Shown piece by piece: positions 5,004 through 63,454 of a DNA stretch of 64,000 nucleotides (its first letter is position 1; each line of letters opens with the position of its first letter). Made by a program: the position numbers and the translations under genes. The DNA is taken from assembly GCA_000388065.2 (NCBI GenBank), contig KB932201.1; one strand, written 5' to 3'. The notes under the pieces are model-generated. The model ran no database searches. It saw only the letters and a list, made by a program, of their open reading frames with translations, and had not been told where the DNA came from. Source of the DNA: Fonticula alba ATCC 38817 (taxonomy: Eukaryota > Protista > Nucleariida).

Positions 5004-8000
5004 ATGATCCCCGGGGGAGGCTCCTCTTCCGCCGGTGGGGGCGGCAGCGATGGGCCCGGTAGCCCGGTGCCCGGGGGGTCTCCTGGCTCCGCCGCGGCCG
5101 CCGCACGCGGTCTTCACCACACCTCCGCCTCACCATCGACACTTCCAGCTTCGGCGGCACACCTGTTCCCCGGGTCACCGCCCGGGCCCCTACACCATTT
5201 GGCCGGTTTCGGGACACCTGGCGGGCCCGTTCCCGGGCATCTGCCCCCGGGGCTCGGCGCACCGCCCCCTCATCCGGCGACCCCCTTTGCCGGAGGCACG
5301 ATGCTGATGGGCGGCTCCGGCCCGGCCGGCGCCCCGGCCACAGTCACCTCTGGTAGTCCGCCCTCTGGCGCCGCGGGCGGCCCCACCCGGCATGTGTTCA
5401 TCACCAGCCTGCCGGACATGCCTCGAGTTGAGCTTCAAAAGTACCTCGAGCGTTATGGCAAGGTGCGGCTCCCCCCCCCNNNNNNNNNNNNNNNNNNNNN
5501 NNNNNNNNNNNNNNNNNNNNNNNNNNNNNNNNNNNNNNNNNNNNNNNNNNNNNNNNNNNNNNNNNNNNNNNNNNNNNNNNNNNNNNNNNNNNNNNNNNNN
5601 NNNNNNNNNNNNNNNNNNNNNNNNNNNNNNNNNNNNNNNNNNNNNNNNNNNNNNNNNNNNNNNNNNNNNNNNNNNNNNNNNNNNNNNNNNNNNNNNNNNN
5701 NNNNNNNNNNNNNNNNNNNNNNNNNNNNNNNNNNNNNNNNNNNNNNNNNNNNNNNNNNNNNNNNNNNNNNNNNNNNNNNNNNNNNNNNNNNNNNNNNNNN
5801 NNNNNNNNNNNNNNNNNNNNNNNNNNNNNNNNNNNNNNNNNNNNNNNNNNNNNNNNNNNNNNNNNNNNNNNNNNNNNNNNNNNNNNNNNNNNNNNNNNNN
5901 NNNNNNNNNNNNNNNNNNNNNNNNNNNNNNNNNNNNNNNNNNNNNNNNNNNNNNNNNNNNNNNNNNNNNNNNNNNNNNNNNNNNNNNNNNNNNNNNNNNN
6001 NNNNNNNNNNNNNNNNNNNNNNNNNNNNNNNNNNNNNNNNNNNNNNNNNNNNNNNNNNNNNNNNNNNNNNNNNNNNNNNNNNNNNNNNNNNNNNNNNNNN
6101 NNNNNNNNNNNNNNNNNNNNNNNNNNNNNNNNNNNNNNNNNNNNNNNNNNNNNNNNNNNNNNNNNNNNNNNNNNNNNNNNNNNNNNNNNTGCTGTCATTC
6201 CCTCCCTCAACCGCCCTCTGACCATCCCCTTTCCTTCGTGCCACCCTCCCTTCCTGGCCATTTCTGCATTCCCCCCCCCCCCCCTGCCATGGTAGTCGCG
6301 TTGGATTTGGCTCAAAGGGCGGCACGCCGACCTCTAATCTGTGGGTCGGCTCCGTCTATGAGACGGTCTCCTATGAGCTGCTCCGGTCGGTCTTCTCGCA
6401 ATATGGCCAAGTGTTGGATTCGAATATCCTACGCAGCTCCACATGTGCTTTTGTGCGCATGGGCAGCATTGCCGAGGCTACTCGGGCCATGGAGGCCCTG
6501 CGCGGACGTAGCCTGGACGGCAACCCAAGCCACATCATGCGCATCGAGTATGCGGATTCCAAGTCCAGCCGGTGCGCCCCCTCTCTCTTTTTCTCTCTCC
6601 CTCCCTCCCTCGCTCCCTCCCTCCCTCCTCACCGCCATGTGTACATCATGCATCTCCATGTGCTTCTGGTCTGCTTTCTTCTCCCCGGCTTCCCGCACTC
6701 AGGGAGGATGACGCCTTGGCTCGGGCGGCGACCGGCAGCTCGCCCGGCAGCCCTGGGCTGACAACCGGCCCTTCGCCACTCACCTCCTCGGCCTCCTCGT
6801 CATCCTTGCTGACGCCTACCGCCTCGCCGGCCCTGGGATCGGCCTTGGGTGGTCCGCCCGGCAGCGGCACAGCCGCCTCGGCTGCCCCGCTGCTCTCCGG
6901 CGGCGGGCAATCGCCCTTCTCGGGAGACGTTTCCCCCGGTGGCGGTAGTGGCGGCGTCCCTCCGGTGGTGTCGCTGGACTTGCGCTTCCACCCGGACAGC
7001 AGCCACGGCGGTGGGGACCCTTCCTCCTCACCTGGGCTGGCTGATGCGGATATCGACTCGGATGTCGGGCGCTTGGCACATGGCGGCCCGGGCATGGCGC
7101 CCCAAGCCCAGGGGGCCGGGGCACATCATTCGCTCCAGCCGGCCATCGGTCATGGATTGCACCACCACCATGGGCACGGGGGGGGGCCCCACTCGCTGGG
7201 GGGCCATCCGGGCGGCGGACCTCCCGGGGTTCCACCCCCGCCCCCACCCCACCCGCTCCAGCATTTGGCCCATCAGCAACCGGCTCCGGGCATGGTGCCC
7301 TTCCACCATCTGCCGCTGGCCGGGCGGTACCCGGCACCGGGCGCCGCCGGGCCGATCCCCATGGTTCCGACTCCGCCTGGTGGGCCGCCTTACGGGCGCC
7401 TCGGAGCACACCTGGGTGCCCCGATGGCCGGGCACCTGGCCATGTCCCGCATGTACCCGCACGGGGTCTTCCCACGAATGCCCCCGGCCGGAGTGGGCCT
7501 GCCGCCCGGGCTCGGGGGCCCATACTTCCCCCCTGCCGGGACCGCTGATCCCTCCGGGGTGGGTCTGCCCCCTGGGATGGGTGGTCCGGCGGCAGCGGCG
7601 GCAGCGGCAGCGGCAGCAGCGGCGGCAGCGGCGGCAGCGGCGGCGGCCGCCGCCGCAAGCAAGGGGCCCAGCACATTGGCTCCCTCGCCCAGCGGGGGGC
7701 TGGCCCCGGCTGGCGGGTCATCCTCACCCCCGCCGCCACTCGGTGCCCGGGGGCTGTCCTCCTCCTCGTCCTCTTCCTCCTCCTCGTCCTCCTCCTCGTC
7801 CTCGTCCTCCTCCTCCTCGACCACCACCGCCCCCGCCAGCGGCAGTGCCCCTTCGTCCGCCTCCACCGGCCGGGGGTTCTCCTCGCTGAGTGCCATCTCC
7901 TGGACCAGTGGCGATCGCTCACGCTCGGCCTCGCCCGACTCCGGGAGCGGCGGTAGCGGCACCTGGCAGCGCGATCGCGAGGACACCCTCTCCGATCGAT

Positions 8001-16815: not shown

Positions 16816-17760
16816 TCAGAAGCCAGGAGGGAGGGTTTGCGGAGAAGGGGAGAGGGGATGGGAGCAGGCATCGTGAAAGAGCGATGGGGGGGGGGGAGGA
16901 GAGATGGGCGAGGTCTGACGGAAAGCGCGCTTGCCTTTTCCCTGCACAGATATCGCGGCACACACCGAGGGGAACTTCTGTTCATCCGCCCGGTGACCAA
17001 ATCCATACATTGTGAGGCATGCATATCTGCTCCAGCCAACTTCCATGCGCCAGTCTCCCCCTCCCCCCATCGGGCTGTTTTTCCGCCGACGCCGCCCCTT
17101 GACCAATGTACCACCCCCTCCCTTCCTCCGCCGCTTCTGTCTCCTTCAGTCACACTGCTTCACACACATACGCATACACGCACACATGCACAAGGGCGCC
17201 CCCCTGCAATGTCCAACGGCCACTCACATGTGCGACGTATTCGACTGCGAGCGCGATATTCACAAGCACACACAAGTGTGTGTGTGTGTGTGTGCGCGCG
17301 CGCGTGCACTAGGCACTCAGCACGGTGCTCAGCATGCGGGCGGCCTGAGACCAGTAGCCCGGGCGCTGGATCGGTGTGCTCATGTCAAAGGGATTGCGCG
17401 AGGGGCTGGTCGACATGTGACGCTGCGATGTGTGCAAGGGGGGGGGGGGGGATATCGCCGCGTGCGATGTGATTTGTCCGCGGGTGAGCATGCACACAAG
17501 CACGCGGGCGGAGCCCAACCGACAACCACACACGAAGGCACATTGGCACATACGCAAGTGGCAGAGGAGGGCCGATGCGTTCGAAGGGTCGGGGAGTGTG
17601 AGAGAGCGGCGCAACTGGCGACAAGAGCTGGTGAAAGGGGGTGCGAGGAGTGGAGAAAAGCACACACACACACACACACGAGTCCTACCCTAATGCCCTC
17701 TCCCTCCCTCTCCCTCTCCCTTTCTCTCTCTCTCTCTCTCTCTCTCTCGCTGCAACCAGC

Positions 17761-20700
17761 TTAGGCCGTCGCGCCTCTGCCCGCCTTTCGCTCCGTTGTC
17801 CCTTTGTCTCCCCGCTTCAGGCTCTCCACCAAGAGGAAGAAAAAATGGCCCAACACGCAGGCAGGCGGGCATACGCCCTCCCCCTCCTGCGCGGCCTCAC
17901 GTACCAGACGGTTTTGATCCTCGTCACAGACATACTCGCGAACGGTGTTCAGGATGGACCGACCGCCGACATCGAGAGCGAGGCCGGCATTCCGGGCAGC
18001 GGAGGACAGATTCCCCCGGCGCCCGGTGGTGTAGAGGGCCTCCTTGCCCGGGGGCAGGATGTACTGGACGTCCTCGCCCGAGGCCCGGCGGCGCAGGGCG
18101 GCCGGGATAATGTCCCCAGGCGACATGCTGAAGATGGTGGAGGTGGCCTCGGCCAGGCGATCGCGCGACCAGACGGCCGACTTGCCCGCCAGCCGGAGTG
18201 CCTGACCCGCCAGTCGGAGTGACTGGCCTGTCAGGCGTCCGGCCCGAGCAGGCAGGTTGGCCAGCCACAGGGTCATCCGGCGAGTGAGCGTGCTGTCGGC
18301 CAGGAAGGCGGCCAACGGGGCGGTCCACTCGCCGCGGCGAGCCCAGGCCCGCTGGACGTGGGCCCGGGCCAATGCCACGGTGGCGGGGATGCGGGCCCGA
18401 AGGCGGCCGGCCGCCGCGCGAACCTTGTCGCGAGCCATGGTCAGGGCGCGGTAGAGGCCGCGCTGCTGGAACTCCTGCTGGATCTGGCGCACAATGCCGC
18501 GCGTCAGTTGGGCATACTCCCGAACCCACGGCCGGAGCCATGCGCCAGCGGCGCGAACCGCGCGCGCCCCGGCCCCCAGGGCACCCTTGCCCAGGTGGTA
18601 GGCGTCGCCGAGGGCCTGGCCGAAGCGGCGGAAGAAGTCGGCCGCCGGCCGACCGGCCATCGCGCCAAGGCGCTTGCCGAGCTGGGCCCATGTTGCCGCG
18701 ATCCGAGCCTCAAGACGGGCTACGGCCCCGGGCAGGGCCCGGGCCGCCGTGGCCCACTGGTGCTGGACCGCGCGTGCGGCCCGGCCGGCCACCGTCAGCA
18801 TGGCATCGAAGGGGGGGACCTGGAGGCCGGCCACGGCGGCGCGAGCCTGCGCATACAGACGCTGGACGCCGCCCGGGGTACGGAGGGCCGTGGCCAGCAG
18901 CTGGGCCCGTTGCAGGGCCCCCTCGAAGCCGAGGCGGCTCAGCAGACGCCGGCCGCCGATCGTCAGCTCGCGTTGCTTTTGCAGGGCAGCCGCACGCAGG
19001 CGCTCCGCCCCGCGGCGGGCCTCCTTTTGCAGGAGGTCTGCCTGGCGGCGAGCCTGCTCCGCGGCCACGGTCGCGTCCTTCTGGAGCTGAGTCACCAAAG
19101 CCGAGCCGTCCTTCTGGAGCTGGGTCAGCTTGGCGGCGCCCTCCTTCTGCAGGGTGGTGGCCATGGCGGCGCCCTCCTTNNNNNNNNNNTGGGTCAGCTT
19201 GGCGGCGCCCTCCTTCTGCAGGGTGGTGGCCATGGCGGCGCCCTCCTTTTGCAGCTTGCTGGCCAGGGCCGAGCCGTCCTTCTGCAGCTGGGTCAGCTTG
19301 GCGGTGCCCTCCTTCTGCAGCTTGGTCAGGGTGGCTGAGCCATCCTTCACCAGCTTGTTGTAGGTGGCCGTGCCTTCCTTCTGCAGCTGGGCCAACTTGG
19401 CGGCGCCCTCCTTGCCGAGGGCCGTCAAAGCGGCAGGGCTGTTCTTCTTCAGGGAGTCCACCGCCGCGGCGCCCTCCTGGCGGAGGCGCTTTGCCGTGGC
19501 GGCACCCTCCTTCTGGAGCCGGGCCAGCTGGGCCGCACTGTCCTTGACCATCTGGTTGTACTTGGCCGTGCCGGTCTTTTGCAATTGGTTGACCATGGCC
19601 GTGCCGTCCTTACGCAGACGATTGACCGTGGCCGTGCCCTCCTTGCGAAGTTTCTTGTAGCTGGCGGCCCCCTCCTTCTGCAGCTTCTGATAGGTGGCCG
19701 AGCCATCCTTGACCAGTTGCTTGTACTTGGTGGTGCCGTCCTTCTGGAGTTTGTTGACCATGGCCGTGCCCTCCTTCTGCAGCTTGTTGACCGCAGCTGT
19801 GCCGTCCTTCTGCAGCTTGTTGGCGATGGCTGTGCCGTCCTTGACAATTTGGTTGTACTTGGCCGTGCCCTCCTTCTGCAGGTGGGTCAGGGCGGCTGAG
19901 CCGTCCTTCACCAACTTCTTGTAGGTGGCAGCGCCTTCCTTCTGGAGCTTGTCGGCGATCATCGAGCCATCCTGCACCAGCTGGTTGTACTTGGCCGTGC
20001 CGTCCTTTTGGAGCTTGGACACCACGGCCGCGCCGTCCTTCTGCAGCTTGGCAAGCTGGGCCGCGCTGTCCTTGACCATCTGGTTGTACTTGGCCGTGCC
20101 GGCCTTTTGCAGGCGGTCTGCCGTGGCGGCGCCCTCCTGGCGGAGCTTCTTCACCCGGCTGGCGCCCTCCTGCTGCAGCTTCTGGTAGGTGGCCGTGCCC
20201 TCCTTGACCAATTGGTTGACCGTGGCCGAGCCGTCCTTCACCAGCTGATTGTACTTGGCAGCGCCCTCCTTCTGGAGCTTGTCCACCAAGACCGAGCCGT
20301 CCTTCTGCAGTTGCTCAACCAGGGCCGCTCCCTCCTTTTGCAAGTGGGAAACCGCCTGGCCGGTCTGCGAGCGAAGGCGCTCGGCCGCGGCCGGGGCCCC
20401 GGCCAGGGTGCTGGCCACCGCGTCGGCGGCCCAGCGTGCCTGGCCGCGCACCTGCTCGGTCACCTGCCGGGCGCCCTTCTCGGCCGAGCGGATGGCCTGC
20501 TCGGCAGTGGCCGCCGTCCGGCGCTGGGCATCCACCAAGGCCGGGGTCTTGGCCAGCCGAGCGGCCGAGCTGCCCACGCCATGGAGCTTTTGCACGGCCG
20601 CATCGGCGGCCTCGGTGACCACATGGTGTGCCACGGTTTGCAGCGTATCGGACACGGTGGATCCTGCCCCCTGGGCGACCTGGCTCAGAAGCCGGTCCCC

Positions 20701-22382
20701 GCGCTCGATGGCCTCACCGACGGTGTGGACCATGCGCGTCAGGCCGATCGAGTTGCCCACATGCCGGGCGAGGTTCACCCCGATGCCGGTGGGCAGGCGC
20801 CATGCCCGGCGGTCCATTGGGCCGGGCTGAAGAAAGGCCAGCGGGATGTCGTTGCGCGAAAAGCCGTTGCGGATCTGCTCGACGGTCGGGCCCTTCATCA
20901 GGGCCTGGCCGCCGTCCATCGGGCGGACACTGCCGCCCCAGATGAGCTGAACACGCACCGGGGCATACACCGGGCCGAGTGTCAGGCCGAGCCGCAGGGC
21001 CGGTCCCCCCGAGCCAGAGGTCCATCCCCCCCCGCCCCCCCCCCCCAGTCATGCGCAGACGGAAGTCCGAATGTCCGGCAAGAGGAGGGCCACACCACAC
21101 CAGCGGAGCCGGCCAGCAAAGTAGAGCCCATGCATGGGGGGCCCGATTCCACATGCGTTGGGAAGCAGCGAGAGTGAGGCCATCGCACCAAGCAAGTGCG
21201 AGCCATTGTGCGCCAGTCACAATGACATCGACCACGGCACACCCATCCACACCCATGGACACACACACACACACACACACGATGGCGGTTCGAACGGTGG
21301 GCGACAATGATAGATCGGCGGTCAGATAACTCGGCCCACTCAACATAGCCCGCCGCCCATGGCGGCCGGCGGCAGGAGAGAAATGTGTCCCCTCGAAGGG
21401 GGTACGAGAGAGAAGTGAACCGCTGGCCACCCCTCCCCCCCCCCCCCCCGCTGTCCATCGCAATCGTGGGATGTGCCCAGGTAGAAACACGCACCCGCTT
21501 GAGAAAGTTGAGCGCGAGCTGCTGCGGCCCGGGGCTCGGGGCCACCGGGGTGCCGGCCAGCTGGCGGTCCTCGCGATCGGCCCGGCGGATGTCCCCGCGC
21601 AGCCGATCCGACATGTTGGACTGGCTGTAGTCCAGCACCCGGGCTGGACGCATCTGGTCGGGTCGAATCCGCGCGGCGGCTGGCCGTTCGGCCGGCGTGA
21701 CCAGGGTGCTCTTGCCGATGCCGGCCGGCCGTTGGACCTCCAGGTGGGGATCCACCCGGCAGGCACTCATCTCGCGGTCGTAATCGAAGAAGGTCGACGT
21801 GACGGGCTGGCGGCCGGCCAGCTGGTTGGCCAGCTCCTCGCTCGTGTACGTCGGGCCCCAGAGGATGCGCCGCCACCAGGTCAAGCTGGCCAGGGCGCCG
21901 GGCAGGGTGTCCGCATCGGCCCCATGGCGCCGGTGCATGGCCGCACACTCGGCATACGCCCCGGGGCCCTGGGGCACCGGGCATGTGTCGCTGTCATGCC
22001 AGTAGGCCGCCGGCTCGGGGCCGAACCAGGCCCGAACCGAGCGCCACTCCGGGTGGAAGGGCAGCTGCTGGCTGGCCCAGTGGAGCTTGGCATGCTGCTG
22101 GAGGTTGGCCCGGTGGGCGCGCTCGTGCGCCACCATGTGCCGGGCCACCATGGTCCCGACGTCGGTGGCAGGCGATGCGCCGGTCGGGCGGGTCACGCTA
22201 ATCTGCGACTGGACAACCGGCATCGCCGAAAGCGACGTCGTACCGCGCGCGCCGCTGGGCCGCCTCGCCGGCGGCGCCGAGGCGGCCCCCCTCTTCGGAA
22301 AGTCTCCGGCCAGGGGGATGGCCGCGTCCTTCATCCGGGCAAGGGCACGCTGTTGCCAGGCCCCGGCCGACGTCCCGGCCAT
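17761..22382 (-). CDS. Orphan protein, ~1350 aa, with a central array of 11-residue amphipathic repeats. Exons 22382-21495 and 20946-17761 (a small terminal intron is possible)
   Basis: Two long ORFs joined by a phase-0 GTGCGT...TTCAG intron (21494-20947). The repeats are strictly in frame and the flanks are Ala/Arg-rich and helical. No recognisable family. Confidence 0.75.
19070..20346 (-). repeat. 33-bp / 11-aa tandem coding repeat, consensus [KQR]L[QV]K[ED]G[ATS]Ax[YVLA][NT], 37 units (39 if the gap-flanking copy is real)
   Basis: Counted unit by unit: HLQKEGAALVE, QLQKDGSVLVD, KLQKEGAAKYN, QLVKDGSATVN ... QLQKDATVAAE. No indels outside the N-gap. Confidence 0.95.
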
Positions 22383-22889
22383 TCGCGCGCACAAGCACCC
22401 ATGCACGCGCAGGAGGCCGGAAGGATGGAGCGGCCCGATAGCCAGCACGGTCCCGGCCACCGGGTCCCAGCACATAGGGACAGGGGAGCCGAGCCGGCAG
22501 GGGAGGTCCCGTCCCCGTCGGGGAAGGGCGGCGGGGAAAGGCCCAATAGGCGAATTCACACTTCGGTGTCAGAGCCCAGCAACTCGATGCGGTGAAAAAA
22601 AAAAAAAAACAGGCGCCAAGATTGGCAAGTGACGATCTCTATTCATCCCCGGCCCGACATGCCCCCGCAGCCCGTGGCCCTGGCCGTGCGAGGCTCTCCC
22701 CCGGCGGGCCTTCCTCGCGCGCCGGGGCGGCACGAGGACGTGTCCCTCTCTTTCTCGCCCTCCGGTGTGTGACTTCTCGCTCTTGCTCTCTCTCGCTCTC
22801 CCGCTTCCCCGCCCGCCGCGATGGCAAAGATGGCCACGCGTGGCAGGGGGCACGCCGGGGAGAGGGCAATCTCCAACGGATGTCCAGCC

Positions 22890-24217
22890 TCAGTGGGGGG
22901 GTACACGTACGCGCTCCTCCGGGCGAAGGGTCCCGGGCGAGCCGAAATCCAACAGCTGGCCGAGCTCATTGTGCAGACGCTCGGTGGCTTGCAGCATGCG
23001 CTCCTCCGATTGGCGAATCGAGTCCGCCAACTGCTCCAGGTCGGACTTGGTGGCCTGGGCCGGGGAAGGGGGCACGGCGCCGTTGGAGGGAAGGTCGGCC
23101 TTGGAAGCTCCGTCACCGTTTGTCTTCTTCCCCGGGCGCGACGTCGTGCCCCTCTGCTCTTTTAAATGCGGCGCATACTTGATGATGGGGGGCGTGCCGC
23201 CGGCGGTGATGACCGTCTGCGGGCGTGTGGCCGCCGCGTCCTACATGAGAGGGGGTATTTGTGTCAGGACCAGGCTACTTGGCCGGGACTCGGGCGGTTG
23301 CCGAGCAGGCCGAGGGGGGGGTGGGGATGGCTCTGCCGGCAGGGCAGGCTGGGGCTGGGGAAAATGCATGGTCGTGCGGAAAGCAAAACACGCCACGCCG
23401 CCCCTCCAAGTGTCGGCTTGCTTCGTATTGGGAGAGCGGCCGGGCCGTTCACATGCCGGGGAAGGGAAGCCGCTGCTCCTTTTGACGCACCTCGATGTTT
23501 TCCATCTGCATCTCGTTCTCAACCTCCGAGAGCAGATAGGTGTTGCCTGGGGTATTCCACTTTACGACGGCGCGGTTGCCGTGTCCCGTAAGCTGTGCAT
23601 GTCACCGGCGCATCCAACCGAAGGCGGCGGCGGCGGCGGCGGCGGCGGCGGCAATGCCGACATCCATGGGTCCGAAGCACGGGCCGCGAGGCAGGGCGTG
23701 AGCGAGCGCCAAACAAGGGGACAAGGAGTCAACCCCGAAGTAGGAGCAGGAGGAGGCCGGCACATCCGAAGGATTCAATGGCCAACGAGGGGCCAGCTGC
23801 CGGGCCGGCACGAGGGGGCCCCCGGTGGGGAAATCAAGCGCGTACCTTGTTCCACAGCCACACGGGCCAGGACTGCATGCTGGAGGGGAGGTCCTCCTCC
23901 TCGGTGATCAGGAGGACATTGGGATTGGGCACCACGGCCGGCTGGCCGGGGGCGCCAGCCGCTCCGGGGACCGGGACCGGCTGGAACATGACCGTACCGT
24001 GGCGCTGTGCCACGGACTGGGCATGCACCACGGTGGCGCAGGCGATGGTGGCGGCCAGCAGGGTCACAAGGAGTTTGGCCGACCGCAGCACGCCCAGTCC
24101 CCCTCTGGAGGACTCGGCGGGAGCGGCGTCGGCCACAGCCACGGGCGGTGACACCGCCCCGGGCTGCAGGTCGTGCTGCTGCTGGCCGACATCCTTATTG
24201 ACTTGGGATGTCGACAT
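22890..24217 (-). CDS. Hypothetical protein, ~274 aa, with one hydrophobic segment and a C-terminal coiled coil. Exons 24217-23846, 23592-23491, 23240-22890
   Basis: Three phase-0 exons with GTACGC and GTGCGT donors join in frame. Hydrophobic LLVTLLAATIACATVVHA; heptad-like SDLEQLADSIRQSEERMLQATERLHNELGQLL. Confidence 0.6.
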
Positions 24218-28600: not shown

Positions 28601-30177
28601 GCGACCAGAACTCGCGCATTCGGGAAGCGCCGCAGGTACAGGAGAATCAGCCAGCAGATGGTTGTCGTCTTGCCGGCGCCAGGCATGCCCAGCACGAGCA
28701 TGTAGTCTTGGACTGCAAGCGAAGGAAGTCCAAGGGACAGGCGTCGGGTGAGGAAAGATACGCCGCATGATGCAGGGGCAGCGGCAGCGGGGGGGGGGGG
28801 ATGCGAGGAAAAGCGGGCTTTCTTGTGTTCGGAGGAACGCACCGGCCAGGGCCTTGCGGAGCATCAGCTGTTGGTCGTCATTCACCAGCGCCGGGTCCTC
28901 GGCTTGGGGAAGATACTCGGCAATCTCGGTCAATGTGGGCACGGCCGAGAAGCGCGGGGCTGCGCGCGGGAAGATCCCCAGCAAAGGGGGCACCCACACC
29001 AAGGGCGTCCGGGCGCCAGATGGCGCATCCGCGGATGGCCAGGCAGCCAAGTGGCAGAGAGCGTCAGGCAGGGAGATCGGGGGAAAGCCCCCTCCAAGAG
29101 GCAGAGTCAAAAACAGGGGGGCCCCCGGCAAGAAGTAAAGCGGACCTTCCAAGTCGACCACCAGCTCGCGAAGGCGTTGAGCTCCGGAGAAGCCGAACAG
29201 ATCGAGCAGAGCCTGGCGCTGGGCGGTTTGACGGAAACTGGAGCTACTCCAGGCCTCCAGGCTACGATCCGCAGAGGGACGGCATGATGTGAGGGGCGGG
29301 CGGAAAGGAGAGAAAGGGCCAAAAGGCGCGGACATGTGAACGAGTGCGCGAGCAGGGGGGGCAACGCGCACATGTGCGCAAGGGCATGGATGCCGGGCAA
29401 AAGTGGACCAGAGGAACATACCGATACAACAGCGGCCGCTCGCGAAGGGTCGGTCCTCCGGGGGAAACCGGCTCGCAGATGTCCTCCAGGTCCGGTAGAT
29501 CTTCGGTCCCGGCAAAGCGCCGGCCCGAGGAACTCGACCCAGCCAGCAGCAGCGGCGGCGGCCGGAAGATGTGCTTGGTGGAGAGGTTGATTTCCAAGAC
29601 CGGGCGGAAGCCAAGCACTTGGCTCAGCCACTCGGCCAGAAGAAGCTCCCCCGCAAGGCCGGCCCCGGCCGGGCCATTTGGCACACCGGCCACCCGGGTG
29701 AAGGCCATGTCATTGGTGTCGGCAAGGCGCCGGCCCCGGTCAAGCCACGCACCCTCCAGATACATTGTGGCGAGGCCGATCGAGTCGCCGGCGCTCAAGG
29801 TGTAGCCCTTCCCCATGTACATGCGCTTGAAGATGTTGGACAGCCAGCTGGCGGTGGAGGAGGACAGAAAGATGGCCCGCGCCCGGCGCCGCAGCCGCCG
29901 GAGGGTCCCCCGCTCGTCCGGCCCGAGGGGCACCAAGTCCAGCGGCAGGCCGGAGGGGGCTCGCCCGCGGCGGACTCCCGGCCCGGCTCGGCCTCGGACG
30001 GCCATCGTTTGGAAGAACCCCAGGAAGTCGGGCCCGAGCTCGGCCGCCAGCCCGGCCACCAGCACTCGCGTCAACAGCGCCGCGCTGGCTGGCCACCGGG
30101 CGAGGGAGGCATTGGGGCCGGTGTCGGGCCTCGCCATGGGGCCTGGCCCGGAGGCCGAGACGGCGGCCGGGGTCGAT

Positions 30178-30215
<38 letters not shown>

Positions 30216-33200
30216 AAAGCCAGCCGGACAGTGAAGCCGGAAGCGGTAAAGCAGATCGCGCGGCGTCCTCCCGGAGTTGAGCGGCAATGTGGGATCCGAA
30301 TAGCGATGGAACTTCGGGGAACGCCCCGGGCCGGAGCCCATGCCCGGCGTGACCAGGCTGCCGAATTCCAAACCATCCAGCGAAAAGCCGAGCGCCGCGC
30401 GCCGATGTGCGGGAGTTTGCCAGAAGGAATCCTCCTCGGAGGCCGTGGCCTGGTCCCGGAGGGACTCCTCCACATCGACCAACTGCAGCCAGTGCCGAAG
30501 GAAGCGCCCATGCTCCTCGGTCACGGCGCTCGTCTCGGCCAGATAGTGCAACCCGACGAAGCGACTGTGGCTGCTCGGCACCGGCCGGGGGATTTGCCCC
30601 GGTCGAAGCGGAGCCTCCGGCTCGGGGAAGATGCCGAGGCCGCCGGAAGCCGGGGCGCTCGTGATGGCGGCATCGCGCGACAGGACCGCCGCTTGGATCC
30701 CATCCGTGGCAAGGTGCCGCCGACGCATGGCCTGCAGGAGAGCCTCATGCACCGGGCCCACGAGAAGCGACTCCGGCAAGGTGGCTCCAGGCGGCGCGCC
30801 TCCGGCAGATGTCTGCGTCCCGGTAAGGGACAGCGTTTGCGAGGTGCTTGTCCCGGCCAGCCGGTGCGCTGCCCGATTGTGATCGGGCACCAGTGTCCCG
30901 AGGAAGGCGCGTGCCGAGGGCACCTTCGGTGTGGGGGACCTGCCGGGGGTTTGGCCTGCGGAGTCGCCGGGACGTCCGTCGGCCAGGGACACCGCGGGGG
31001 TGCTCTTTTCCCGGAGCTCCTCATCCATTTCCACGAGGGCCGTGGTGATGGCCATCTGGTCGAAGGGGGCCCCGCCCTCGAGCATGCGCCCGGCCAGCAG
31101 GCACGCTTGCCGCAGGTCGCACCTCTCGCAAGTCCGGTGGAAGGAGGCCGACAGCGGCTCCGGAAAGCGAGGCCGGGAATCCTGCAAGAAGGAGACAAGC
31201 TCATTCCGCCTGATGAGCAGCTCCTTGATGGCCTCCCAGGTGGCCGTGAAAGGATGGTAGATGGACTCACTGTGAGGGGGCTGGGAGCTCTGGTCACCTG
31301 TCGAGGAGGCCTCCCCGGAGGGGATGCCACCCCAGGATCGATGGTGCACCACCTGCACATACAGCAGGCCCGAGACAACCGGCTGGTCATACCGCTCGGA
31401 TGCCAGTAGCGAATAGATGGCCAGCTGCGATTCGAAGTCGTTCAGGAAGTACTGCATGGAGGACATGGTCCCGCGAGTCTTCACCTCCAGCGGGGCCACT
31501 TGCACTCCGCCCCCATCAACCTGATACTCCACCATGGCATCGACGAATCCGCTCAAGCCGAGCAATGGGGACACCAGGCTTTCCTCGATGTTCAGCAGCC
31601 GGAGGATCAGGTTCTCAGACAGGGCCATGGAGTTGGCCTTGGCCTTGGCCTTGGCCGGGAACTTCTCATCCACAACCGGTCCAGCCAGGGCGCAATGCTT
31701 GTCCATCCATTGCCGAACGCCGAGTAGATATTGTCGCAGGAGGTTGGCCGCCACGTCGAGCGTGTAGCCGAGCGAGAAAATCTTGATGCGGTTGTCTTCG
31801 ATGATGTCTTTGATGAGCTGCTCCTCGAACGGAGCATCCCGCCTGCCGGACATCAAGATTTGCTGCACCATCAAATGAACCTGCGCAGTGCCCCCGCGGT
31901 GGGGAGGTGCGGAACAACATCCGGCACAGGTGGGGGAGAGAGAGAGAGAGAGTGCATAGTGGGCACGGGGGATTAGAAAGGCAGTAGGGAGACGCGGGTA
32001 GGGGGAGTGGCCGTCGGCGAGGAAGAGGGGAAAGGGGGCGACGAAGCGACAGAGAGAGGGAGAGAGAGAGAGAGAGAAAGAAAGAAAGAAGGAGGGAGGA
32101 AAGCGCTGAAGAACAGCCCGCGCCGCATACCATCGACCCTCGGAGGGAATCGGTACTTCCCGTGAATTTCGAGCCGAAATACTTCTTGAGCACCGTCTGG
32201 CGGCTGCAGTGTGCGCGTGCGAGATCTCCGCTGGGGAACAGGAAGTCGGGATTGACAATGAGAAGGCCGCCCTCATTGTCGACAACCAGCGGCAATGCCA
32301 AGGCCTCGCCCATGACATCGGAGGCCTGGCCGAGGAGCGCGCTCTCGAAGAGGTGATATGCTCGGGCCACCGACCGCGTGGGGAGGCTATCCTGGCTGAA
32401 GAACTGCCGCGGAATGATTTGCACCGAGAGCCCAACCTCCAGAGGCAGGGAGGCCCAGTCATCGCGAAGAAGCACCTCCAGATCCCGCTGGACCCCGGGG
32501 TGATAGACGGAAACAGCCTAGCCGGTGGGCGCGATGTGTTCGTATGTCCGGGCGGGCGGGCGGGCGGGCGGGCGTGCACATGTGTGCGTATGTGTGTGTG
32601 CACCCACGTTGGGGCGTGTGGCGGTGTGTGAGTGTGCGCAGTCTCCCCCACTGAAGGATGAGGGGCCGGAAGGGACGGATGGCAAACGGAGCACAGGACA
32701 AATGCAAGGGCGGGAAGAGGGAGCCATGCGCACCCGCTGCTTGGTGGACCAATCACCGGAGTACCTCGGATCGAGGATGTCAGTCACTGGCGACACATCT
32801 GTGATGGTCAGGCGCATGAATGAAGGCCCGGAGCTCAGGAGATTCCGGGCATTGCCCTCCCGCGAGTAGGGCGCCCGATCCTGGCCCTCATCGTGCGGAG
32901 CAAAGGTCACTGCCTCAGGACCACTGGCCGGGGCATTTGGAACGGGCCAAGTGCCAGACATCGCCTCGTCGACCGGGGCGCCCTGTGCTGAATCATCGGT
33001 CGACATGGGATTTGGCGCCATCTTGACGGGCGCGGCGTCACCTGGAGCCGGATCGCCGGCCAGAGGGTCGACCGGGGTCGAGCAGGCCGGCGGGGTGTCG
33101 GCCGGGGTCGAGTTGGCAAGCGGAGTGTCGAGCAAGTCCATGCCATACTCCATGGAGTCTAGATCCGAGAGATTTTCAAAATCCGACAGAGACACGAGCC

Positions 33201-62471: not shown

Positions 62472-63454
62472 GGTGGAAAGGAAGGAGTGAAGGGGGGGGG
62501 GGAGGACAAGAGCAAAGACGGGGCAAACGGAATGGGCGAGAGGGGGAGGTGGCGGAGTCCGTTGCATCCTCCCTTCTCCGGGCCTGTGCCCTGTGCCGCC
62601 GACGGAAATAAGGACCGCTGCGATCCCGGATGATGCCGGCTCGGGGGGTGGGGGGGGGGGAGGGGTGCTCCATGCATGCCAATACCGGTGCATCCAAGAT
62701 TTACACGCAATTGGGGCATGCACGCCAGCTGACCCCACACAAACACTGCCCAGCGGAGCTCTTGACTAACCGATTCCCCAGNNNNNNNNNNNNNNNNNNN
62801 NNNNNNNNNNNNNNNNNNNNNNNNNNNNNNNNNNNNNNNNNNNNNNNNNNNNNNNNNNNNNNNNNNNNNNNNNNNNNNNNNNNNNNNNNNNNNNNNNNNN
62901 NNNNNNNNNNNNNNNNNNNNNNNNNNNNNNNNNNNNNNNNNNNNNNNNNNNNNNNNNNNNNNNNNNNNNNNNNNNNNNNNNNNNNNNNNNNNNNNNNNNN
63001 NNNNNNNNNNNNNNNNNNNNNNNNNNNNNNNNNNNNNNNNNNNNNNNNNNNNNNNNNNNNNNNNNNNNNNNNNNNNNNNNNNNNNNCCCCCGACCACCCG
63101 GGAGGGAGAGAAAGCCACGGACGCCAGAGTACCAACCGCCCGGCACCCCGGTGTCACTTGCCCCGCCCCCCTCGCCCCCCTCGCTCCCGCTCGACGACCG
63201 GGCCCGGAGGGCTTCGCCCGCCCCGCTGGCCGACACATGCGTTGGGATATGCATTGTTGAGTGTGGGAAAATACCCGACCGGGATGGAGGCGTGCCGGAC
63301 TGGGCGCGGCGCATGCGCGCGCGCGCGCGCGCGCGGGCCAGGCTCGAGCACACCAGGCGCCTCCTCTGCCTCCCCCGGCTGCCTCCATTCATCATGGCCG
63401 GCAGGGGCGTCCTCCCGGGCCTGGCTTCTCCCGGCCGGGATCCGCGGCCGGAGA

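What the first reader, a model, noticed from the sequence alone, without database searches (positions are those of the whole stretch)
17761..22382. Orphan ~1350 aa protein with 37 perfectly phased 11-mer amphipathic repeats (synuclein/perilipin/LEA3-like 3-11 helix)
Seen: ~400 aa of exact 11-residue units with a K(E/D)G core, Leu at position 2 and a second apolar residue at positions 9-10, a Lys-rich polar face, and higher-order re-use (TAKYNQMVKDSAAQLA occurs twice). A non-repetitive N-terminal region precedes the array and ~400 aa of Ala/Arg/Trp amphipathic helices follow it. Established: 11/3 helices bind lipid surfaces in perilipins, exchangeable apolipoproteins and alpha-synuclein (xKTKEGVxxxx), and occur in group-3 LEA desiccation proteins. 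Inference: a lineage-specific lipid-droplet or membrane coat, or a desiccation protectant for spores or cysts. I recognise no family for it.
Basis: partly seen in the sequence, partly recalled or inferred. Interest (0 to 1): 0.8.

Follow-up and report, generated by a model that had tools for sequence, protein, structure and literature searches.

The report
Orphan giant 11-residue-repeat helix protein
A real but uncharacterised gene of the slime mould Fonticula alba (H696_00714) encodes about 1,377 residues built around 39 perfectly phased 11-residue repeats, predicted to form one very long, positively charged, weakly amphipathic helix like those that coat lipid droplets or storage granules; its function is untested.

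Summary
On the minus strand, 20343-19054 encodes 39 gap-free 11-residue units with consensus L-Q-K-(E/D)-G-(A/T/S)-A-x-(V/Y/L/A)-x-(K/Q). They sit inside Fonticula alba gene H696_00714.

The assembly gap (19180-19189) is probably 7 nt. That keeps both the reading frame and the 11-residue phase. The public 1,310-aa model hides the gap in a false 204-nt intron and so loses six units. The true length is about 1,377 aa.

GC3 of 0.85-0.90 in exons against about 0.65 in intron 1 supports exons 1-2 and that intron. The 3' end is unsettled. No RNA evidence could be obtained.

No relative was found. An exhaustive search with the first 530 residues and word-based searches with the array and the C-terminus returned only the protein itself. 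The only family hit above threshold is partial, to bacterial phasins (PF05597).

AlphaFold2 predicts the array as continuous helix. The 3/11 hydrophobic moment is 0.335, between perilipin-4 and ApoA-I, but 12-16% of column permutations reach that value.

The array carries about +1 charge per unit. There is no transmembrane segment or signal peptide.

Best reading (about 0.4): an independently evolved, conditionally folding surface-coating helix, analogous to perilipin-4 or phasins. Rivals are an LEA-like protectant, a hendecad coiled coil and a polyanion binder.

The scan noted this same stretch once more (s1-065844).

The parts
21495..22475 (-). Coding exon 1 (327 aa from the annotated ATG at 22475; an alternative ATG lies at 22382). 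Pro/Arg/Gly-rich with no recognisable domain. Contains an HERAH string at 22113-22127.
   Evidence: It matches P0001 exactly. GC3 is 0.89 against 0.62-0.72 upstream. There are no Pfam, NCBIfam or PDB relatives. Exhaustive phmmer found only the protein itself. AlphaFold2 pLDDT is below 50.
20947..21494 (-). Intron 1 (548 nt, GTGCGT...TTCAG), carrying poly-G and (GT)n runs.
   Evidence: The splice sites were read. GC is flat across the three phases (0.62/0.68/0.66). The join reproduces P0001. No RNA reads were available to confirm it.
20344..20946 (-). Start of exon 2: 201 non-repeat residues. The last ~150 (about 20790-20344) are a predicted helical, proline-poor lead-in to the array.
   Evidence: GC3 is 0.88. 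AlphaFold2 predicts helices at P0001 380-456 and 463-599.
19054..20343 (-). The array of 39 in-phase 11-residue units (35 left and 4 right of the gap). It is predicted to be continuous alpha-helix, about 429 aa, roughly 64 nm long at 0.15 nm per residue.
   Evidence: describe the repeats. GC3 is 0.90. AlphaFold2 gives helix with pLDDT up to 94 and 50-69 in the longer construct. The 3/11 moment is 0.335, mean hydrophobicity 0.095, net charge +0.94 per unit. GRAVY is -0.71 and pI 9.9.
19180..19189 (.). Assembly gap written as 10 N, most likely 7 nt in reality. It is in frame and in phase, and probably encodes the end of Q followed by L-Q.
   Evidence: Contigs of X1 and X5 lie across it with 3 letters left out. 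The 7 letters beside the two copies are GCTGCAA and GCTCCAG; either would give Q-L-Q. That last step is inference.
19121..19248 (.). Two identical 59-nt copies (19121-19179 and 19190-19248) flanking the gap, read as a recent tandem duplication of 66 nt (two units).
   Evidence: Identity was shown. The 59-mer unitig has depth 202 against 100 for the junction and 116-136 for the flanks.
19147..19350 (-). The 'intron' of the public gene model (204 nt, GTGAAG...CTGCAG). It is an annotation workaround over the gap. It removes about 67 residues (six units and one residue) and breaks the repeat phase.
   Evidence: Reconstruction of P0001 from the window is exact only with this skip. GC3 inside the skipped stretch is 0.94-1.0, which is coding-like.
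17905..19053 (-). C-terminal region, about 380 aa: Arg/Ala/Trp-rich, predicted helical segments. It is more hydrophobic than the array (mean hydrophobicity 0.35-0.45, moment up to 0.46), with pI about 12.
   Evidence: GC3 is 0.85. No family or relative was found.
17309..17904 (-). Uncertain 3' end. The public model has intron 2 at 17904-17423 (GTACGT...CAG) and a 37-codon last exon at 17422-17309. The alternative is read-through to the stop at 17761-17763.
   Evidence: One search gives the sequence and the model. GC3 is 0.84 in the last exon but also 0.77 in the read-through tail, so composition does not decide between them.

Best explanation
This is a genuine, lineage-restricted protein-coding gene of Fonticula alba (H696_00714).

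Its core is 39 perfectly phased 11-residue units. I read these as a conditionally folding 11/3 ('3-11') helix about 60 nm long. It has a narrow apolar stripe (Leu at position 1, Gly at 5, Val/Tyr/Leu at 9) and a Lys-rich opposite face, about +37 net charge over the array.

The most likely mode of action is surface adsorption. The long, weakly hydrophobic, cationic helix lies flat on an apolar or anionic interface: a lipid-droplet monolayer, a membrane or another storage-body surface. It binds through many weak contacts summed over its length. The more hydrophobic Arg/Trp-rich C-terminal helices help to anchor it.

That is how perilipin-4 works on lipid droplets and how phasins work on polyester granules. 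The protein appears to have reached this design independently.

Shown: the gene structure of exons 1-2, the repeat anatomy, the probable gap closure, the lack of relatives, the helix prediction and the physicochemical values.

Inferred: folding on contact, the target surface and the biological role.
For: - Perfect phase: 39 units with no indel, although units share only about 63% DNA identity. Third codon positions are the most diverged (0.55, against 0.72 at second positions), which points to selection on the protein pattern and on phase.
- A second strain carries one extra unit of exactly 33 nt.
- Coding signal: GC3 is 0.85-0.90 in exons against about 0.62-0.66 in introns.
- AlphaFold2 predicts continuous helix through the conserved Gly.
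- The 3/11 harmonic is the largest. The moment is 0.335, hydrophobic fraction 0.37, aromatic fraction 0.03, charged fraction 0.28. These lie between perilipin-4 (0.257/0.35/0.002/0.15) and ApoA-I (0.39/0.40/0.065/0.35) in Table 1 of PMC5889406.
- Like perilipin-4, the array is gap-free, Gly/Thr/Ala-rich and net positive.
- The only family above threshold is the phasin family PF05597: 43.9 bits overall, and 33.3 bits on one 110-aa piece, against a cut-off of 28.8. These granule coats are disordered until bound and bind through an amphipathic helix (PMC5658603).
- The nearest language-model neighbours, all weak, are perilipin-4-like, CsmB, LEA_4 and Phasin_2 clusters.
- There is no transmembrane segment or signal-like hydrophobic core.
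Against: - The amphipathic segregation is not statistically exceptional: 12-16% of column permutations reach the observed moment.
- The strongly apolar stripe is only two positions wide (about 65 degrees) with Gly in the middle. Ala7 is strictly conserved on the polar face.
- Lys sits opposite the apolar face rather than at the interface.
- Opposite-charge pairs at i,i+4 are frequent (30 against 3 same-charge pairs). This could stabilise a soluble helix or a coiled coil.
- There is no homology to perilipins, synucleins, LEA_4 or apolipoproteins.
- There are no expression, localisation or lipid-binding data at all. The two RNA runs tried contained no reads of this organism.
- Nothing is known here about lipid droplets in Fonticula.
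Confidence: 0.4

Rival explanations
1. LEA-3-like stress or desiccation protectant. The array is disordered when hydrated and folds into an amphipathic helix on drying, shielding membranes and proteins in Fonticula spores or cysts.
For: It has an 11-residue period with apolar positions 1, 2, 5 and 9. It is rich in Gly (8.6%), Lys, Thr and Ala, and is hydrophilic overall (GRAVY -0.71). LEA_4 clusters appear among the weak feature neighbours. Fonticula is an aggregative species that forms multicellular fruiting bodies; that these hold spores is my own knowledge.
Against: There is no LEA_4 (PF02987) match even at E<=1. A Leu in every unit and a GRAVY of only -0.71 make it less hydrophilic than typical hydrophilins (criterion recalled from memory). 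Roughly 950 aa of non-repeat flanks and a strongly basic, Trp-rich C-terminus are unlike LEA proteins.
Confidence: 0.2
2. Hendecad coiled-coil rod. Positions 9, 1 and 5 form an a/d/h core with 3-4-4 spacing, and the protein is a dimeric or trimeric cytoskeletal or tethering scaffold, similar in spirit to bacterial Scy/FilP.
For: The 3-4-4 spacing of V/Y/L, L and G and the narrow apolar stripe fit this. Salt-bridge-compatible pairs at i,i+4 and i,i+7 are frequent (30 each). There are weak hits to Scy (37.6 bits) and other coiled-coil models. AlphaFold2 predicts long uninterrupted helices.
Against: An invariant Gly at a core position and Thr/Ser/Asn/Gln-rich units are poor coiled-coil material. 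Scy scores 37.6 bits against a cut-off of 1040. A net charge of about +1 per unit would repel parallel partner helices.
Confidence: 0.2
3. Polyanion binder. The uniformly basic protein (pI 9.7-12 in every region, about +90 net) binds nucleic acid, polyphosphate or acidic polysaccharide rather than lipid.
For: The charge profile is. PhaF-type phasins combine an amphipathic helix with a histone-like DNA-binding tail (PMC5658603).
Against: No known nucleic-acid-binding domain was found. The regular apolar stripe is not needed for polyanion binding.
Confidence: 0.1
4. The array descends from a bacterial phasin acquired from prey and amplified. Homology with PF05597 would then be real.
For: The PF05597 score is above Pfam's gathering cut-off, even on a single 110-aa piece. 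Fonticula feeds on bacteria (own knowledge).
Against: Only 48-60 of 126 model positions are matched. TIGR01837 scores 46.4 bits against a cut-off of 94.7. Many unrelated models also score on these repeats. The gene has introns and native GC3. The array alone found no protein of 204-648 aa in the 5.8-billion-protein search; phasins as short as PhaI and PhaF lie below that length range, so they were not tested.
Confidence: 0.05

Closest known systems
Perilipin-4 (vertebrate PLIN4) giant amphipathic helix
   Same: A very long tandem array built on an 11-residue period with no insertions or deletions. Weak hydrophobicity, rich in Gly/Thr/Ala, and net positive. Non-repeat regions flank the array on both sides (PMC5889406).
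   Different: There is no sequence relationship and no Perilipin/PAT domain. The unit is 11 residues with no 33-mer super-repeat. The array is shorter, 429 aa against 968. It has a Leu in every unit and Tyr in about 30% of units, nearly twice the charged fraction (0.28 against 0.15), and about +2.8 net charge per 33 residues against +1.
Bacterial phasins, Pfam PF05597 / TIGR01837 (PHA-granule-associated proteins)
   Same: This is the only family scoring above a curated cut-off. It shares an LVK(D/E)G-type helical motif (motif recalled from memory). Phasins are coat proteins that are disordered until bound and bind through an amphipathic helix (PMC5658603).
   Different: Only part of the model is matched, and the NCBIfam cut-off is missed. 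This is a eukaryotic, intron-bearing gene of about 1,377 aa, against 15.4-26.3 kDa for PhaI and PhaF (PMC5658603). No PHA metabolism is expected in the host.
Alpha-synuclein 11-mer repeats (xKTKEGVxxxx)
   Same: A K-E-G core within an 11-residue period and a weakly hydrophobic, Gly-containing helix. Folding of the synuclein helix depends on contact with lipids (PMC5889406).
   Different: No Synuclein family match. It has 39 units, against 7 for synuclein as I recall it. The radial layout differs: here Gly is at the centre of the apolar face and Lys opposite it, whereas in synuclein the lysines flank the apolar face (plus memory for synuclein).
Group 3 LEA proteins (Pfam LEA_4)
   Same: Tandem 11-mers with apolar positions 1, 2, 5 and 9, hydrophilic and Lys/Ala/Thr-rich.
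   Different: No LEA_4 match. Leu-rich and less hydrophilic. Large non-repeat flanks.
Hendecad coiled coils (for example Scy/FilP of Streptomyces)
   Same: An 11-residue-based periodicity with 3-4-4 apolar spacing, and long uninterrupted predicted helices.
   Different: Gly occupies one core position. The score is far below the family cut-off (37.6 against 1040 bits).

Membership tests
Perilipin family (PF03036) | N-terminal PAT/Perilipin domain detectable by the Pfam model | tested here: not met
   No PF03036 match at E<=1 or E<=10 in any piece.
Perilipin family (PF03036) | 11-mer repeat region forming an amphipathic helix | tested here: met
   39 phased 11-mers, AlphaFold2 helix, 3/11 moment 0.335. 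The moment is not exceptional against permutations (p 0.12-0.16).
Perilipin family (PF03036) | Plin4-type conservation at the 33-mer level | tested here: not met
   Identity at lag 3 (0.46 aa) is no higher than at lags 1-2 (0.45). There is only a weak rise at lags 15-16.
Perilipin family (PF03036) | Localisation to lipid droplets | not testable with these tools
   Needs microscopy or droplet proteomics.
Phasin PF05597 / TIGR01837 | Score above the curated cut-off over the family model | tested here: inconclusive
   Pfam scores are 43.9 bits (array) and 33.3 bits (110-aa piece) against a cut-off of 28.8, but only model positions 24-87 of 126 are covered. TIGR01837 scores 46.4 bits against 94.7 and so fails.
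Phasin PF05597 / TIGR01837 | Association with polyhydroxyalkanoate granules | not testable with these tools
   Not expected in a eukaryotic amoeba; no data.
Synuclein (PF01387) | Family model match / KTKEGV repeats with interfacial lysines | tested here: not met
   No Pfam or PDB-sequence match. Lys3 lies about 160 degrees from the moment direction.
LEA group 3 (PF02987 LEA_4) | Family model match | tested here: not met
   No LEA_4 hit at E<=1. Only a weak feature neighbour at 0.67.
Exchangeable apolipoproteins (PF01442) | Family model match; proline-punctuated 11/22-mers | tested here: not met
   12 bits against a cut-off of 90. Proline makes up 0.3% of 374 array residues, a single Pro in unit 28.
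Hendecad coiled coil (Scy, NF041483) | Family model match; apolar a/d/(e)/h core | tested here: inconclusive
   37.6 bits against 1040, so not a member. The a/d positions are apolar but h is an invariant Gly.

The most novel reading that the evidence does not exclude
Fonticula alba evolved, from scratch and outside animals, its own giant perilipin-4-like coat. This would be a ~60-nm cationic 11/3 helix that covers lipid droplets or another storage or secretory body, perhaps during aggregation and sorocarp or spore formation. Giant-helix coating would then be a convergent solution shared by animals (PLIN4), bacteria (phasins) and a holomycotan slime mould.
Probability: 0.3. Interest if true: 0.65.

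Novelty: new variant of a known kind. Interest (0 to 1): 0.45.

Why it matters
Long, perfectly phased 11-residue arrays are the hallmark of proteins that fold on contact with lipid or polymer surfaces: perilipin-4, synucleins, apolipoproteins, LEA-3 proteins and phasins. A 39-unit example with no detectable relatives, in a deep-branching relative of fungi, would be an independent natural experiment. It bears on how helix length, charge and weak hydrophobicity set surface selectivity. It would also give a first handle on storage-body or spore biology in Fonticula.

On the practical side, the public gene model is wrong across the assembly gap. It loses six repeat units and the repeat phase, and that can be corrected.

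Tried and rejected
- RNA evidence. Two large RNA runs offered under 'organism B' (X20, X21) gave zero reads. That label is evidently not Fonticula, so this was no test. A second run search found only metatranscriptome contigs holding 0.07-0.17 of the words, and I had no call left to lay them.
- Metagenome scans. An exact-pattern scan of JGI metagenome contigs for the spliced exon 1/exon 2 junction found nothing. A scan for the gap junction with 7 free letters also found nothing.
- Fold searches. I did not run them. The N-terminal (1-400) and C-terminal models have pLDDT below 50, and a lone long helix gives trivial matches.
- PDB sequence searches of all three regions gave nothing below E=0.008, and the best hit (myomesin) is noise.
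- tblastn of an array piece against plasmids, meant to fetch natural phasins for alignment, gave only two weak unrelated hits.
- PF28068 is listed for the protein in the precomputed Pfam column. It is absent from the local Pfam copy and from the paper library, so I could not learn what it is.
- Neighbouring ORFs gave no functional context. Only a Dna2-like ORF was recognisable.
- Strain differences are too few to measure constraint: 5 synonymous against 6 non-synonymous changes.
- A near Walker-A string (GIGKST) fails the pattern. HERAH is a lone HExxH with no family support.


Full report
**What is there.** The minus strand of 17761-20970 is one open frame. Tandem Repeats Finder reports 33-nt periods and their multiples over 19076-20342. 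Cut in register, the translation gives 35 consecutive 11-residue units left of the gap and 4 right of it, with no insertion or deletion on either side.

Over the 37 complete units the columns read:
- Position 1: L34
- Position 2: Q22, V9
- Position 3: K33
- Position 4: E17, D17
- Position 5: G33
- Position 6: A14, T14, S8
- Position 7: A32
- Position 8: variable
- Position 9: V11, Y11, L8, A7
- Position 10: variable
- Position 11: K15, Q14

Units share on average only 63% of their DNA letters. Third codon positions are the most diverged (0.55, against 0.72 at second positions), and Leu1 uses four different codons. So this is an old array whose protein pattern and phase have been maintained, not a fresh amplification.

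**The gap (tested first, as asked).** The 59 nt on each side of 19180-19189 are identical. In Logan's contigs of the probable source sample (X1), a 67-letter unitig of depth 100 lies on 19150-19219 with no mismatch and 3 letters left out at 19180. A contig of an independent sample (X5) shows the same 3-letter omission. That means 7 letters stand where 10 N are written.

Since 59+7 = 66 nt = two units, both the reading frame and the 11-residue phase run through. With 10 N the frame is also open, but the phase would slip by one residue. The 59-mer unitig has depth 202, against 100 for the junction and 116-136 for the unique flanks. That fits exactly two copies, not a collapsed longer array.

Two caveats apply. 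The junction unitig has 30 letters on each side, one short of the tool's own 31-letter rule, which is inherent to k=31 unitigs. And I could not see the 7 letters. The 7 letters beside the two copies (GCTGCAA, GCTCCAG) would both encode Q-L-Q, but that step is inference. X5 also carries one extra 33-nt unit (joint 20024 to 19992), a whole-unit, in-phase copy-number difference.

**Gene and organism.** A search of 5.8 billion proteins returned one hit, 'hypothetical protein H696_00714 [Fonticula alba]', 1,310 aa (P0001). P0001 is reproduced exactly from the window as 22475-21495 + 20946-19351 + 19146-17905 + 17422-17312, followed by the stop at 17311-17309.
- GC3 is 0.85-0.90 in all exons and 0.62-0.66 in both introns. 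This supports the N-terminal exon as real coding sequence even though nothing resembles it.
- The annotated 'intron' 19350-19147 (204 nt) sits inside the array, spans the gap and has GC3 of 0.94-1.0. It is a workaround that deletes about 67 residues and breaks the phase.
- The corrected length is about 1,377 aa.
- The 3' end is not settled. The last exon (17422-17309) has GC3 of 0.84, but the read-through tail to 17761 has 0.77.

**Expression.** I have no expression evidence. The two RNA runs laid had no reads of this organism. Only metatranscriptome contigs hold 7-17% of the sampled words. No spliced junction was found in JGI metagenome contigs.

**Relatives.**
- Exhaustive phmmer of residues 1-530 against 1.84 billion representatives found only the protein itself.
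- Word-based searches with exon 2, with the C-terminal 406 residues, and with the array alone (candidates of 204-648 aa) found only the protein itself or nothing.
- Pfam, NCBIfam and PDB sequence searches found nothing for the N- and C-terminal regions.
- On the array, the only curated cut-off passed is Pfam Phasin PF05597: 43.9 bits overall and 33.3 bits on a single 110-aa piece, against a cut-off of 28.8. Only model positions about 24-87 of 126 are covered.
- The matching NCBIfam model TIGR01837 scores 46.4 bits against a cut-off of 94.7.
- Many unrelated models also score weakly on these repeats.
- Language-model neighbours are weak (0.74 or lower). They are thematically consistent: arthropod 'perilipin-4-like' clusters, CsmB chlorosome envelope, LEA_4 and Phasin_2.
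- A precomputed accession, PF28068, could not be resolved.

So the protein is an orphan by sequence, with a partial, probably convergent, resemblance to phasins.

**Physical reading.** AlphaFold2, run on the single sequence, predicts continuous helix from about residue 380 of P0001 through the array. pLDDT rises to 85-94 in the first units and is 50-69 in an 811-residue construct. Residues 1-400 and the C-terminal region stay below 50.

On an 11/3 wheel the hydrophobic moment is 0.335 (Fauchere-Pliska scale). That is the largest of the five harmonics and vanishes at 100 degrees or at the 7/2 angle. However, 12-16% of permutations of the eleven columns do as well.

The layout around the wheel is as follows:
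- Moment direction: 35 degrees.
- Apolar stripe: Leu1 (0 degrees), Gly5 (33 degrees) and V/Y/L9 (65 degrees).
- Lys3: 196 degrees.
- Ala7: 229 degrees.
- K/Q11: 262 degrees.
- E/D4: 295 degrees.

Other values:
- Mean hydrophobicity 0.095.
- GRAVY -0.71.
- pI 9.9.
- Net charge +0.94 per unit.
- Hydrophobic fraction 0.37, aromatic 0.03, charged 0.28.

Table 1 of PMC5889406 gives perilipin-4 as 0.257/0.35/0.002/0.15 and ApoA-I as 0.39/0.40/0.065/0.35. The array lies between them. No 19-residue window exceeds a Kyte-Doolittle mean of 1.17, so no transmembrane segment or signal peptide is apparent. Every region of the protein is basic.

**Interpretation.** Four features of the array match proteins that are unfolded in solution and fold on a surface, such as perilipin-4 and phasins (PMC5889406; PMC5658603):
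- unbroken phase;
- an invariant Gly in every unit;
- small or hydroxylated residues;
- low hydrophobicity with positive charge.

I therefore favour a surface-coating helix whose many weak contacts add up, with the more hydrophobic Arg/Trp-rich C-terminal helices (mean hydrophobicity 0.35-0.45, moment up to 0.46) as a possible anchor. My confidence is about 0.4, because nothing about binding, localisation or expression was testable.

The same 3-4-4 spacing is also a hendecad a/d/h core, and i,i+4 salt-bridge pairs are frequent. A coiled-coil rod is therefore a serious rival (0.2), weakened by Gly in the core and by the net positive charge. An LEA-like protectant (0.2) fits the period and composition. 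It does not fit the missing LEA_4 match, the Leu content or the large flanks. A polyanion binder (0.1) and true descent from a phasin (0.05) remain possible.

**Membership and novelty.** The protein is not a member of the perilipin, synuclein, LEA_4 or apolipoprotein families; the defining models were tested and not met. Phasin membership is inconclusive and probably convergent. It is best filed as a new, independently arisen variant of the known class of long 11-residue-repeat helices. The scan noted the same stretch once more in an overlapping window (s1-065844), not on other DNA.

Noticed in passing
window 19992-20024: In an independent DNA sample (X5, labelled as another organism) a contig 'goes back 33' here. 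That strain has one extra 11-residue unit, a whole-unit, in-phase copy-number polymorphism of the array.
   Followed up: partly
window 17300-22900 (runs X5-X17): Near-identical DNA of this Fonticula gene turns up at low depth in DNA runs labelled as a different, heavily studied organism, and in soil, sediment, compost, sludge and animal-gut metagenomes. This suggests Fonticula or close strains are widespread contaminants or commensals. RNA runs under that other label held no reads.
   Followed up: no
window 22113-22127 (-), P0001 residues 117-121: A lone HExxH string (HERAH) in a His-rich predicted helix of the orphan N-terminal region. No metalloprotease family matches, so it may be chance.
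   Followed up: partly
window 21250-21289, 21422-21459, 17650-17758: Both introns of the gene carry microsatellites: (GT)n, poly-G and (GA)n/(CT)n. The reads tool skipped these stretches as repeats.
   Followed up: no
window 18185-18225 (-): A 21-nt tandem duplication in the C-terminal region (encoding LTGQSLR / LAGQALR-like heptads). It is the only other repeat in the gene.
   Followed up: no
window 29262-32756 (-): A long ORF with a Dna2 / PD-(D/E)XK nuclease match (PF08696, E 1.4e-11). It was the only neighbouring ORF of the six scanned with a recognisable family.
   Followed up: no
window 1326-63086: Nine assembly gaps lie in this 64-kb window (1,213 N in all, including 5480-6189 and 62782-63086). 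Other gene models here may hide gaps in false introns, as H696_00714 does.
   Followed up: no
P0001 (precomputed Pfam column): Accession PF28068.1 is listed for this protein but is absent from the local Pfam copy and from the paper library. Its identity is unknown to me and worth a look-up.
   Followed up: partly
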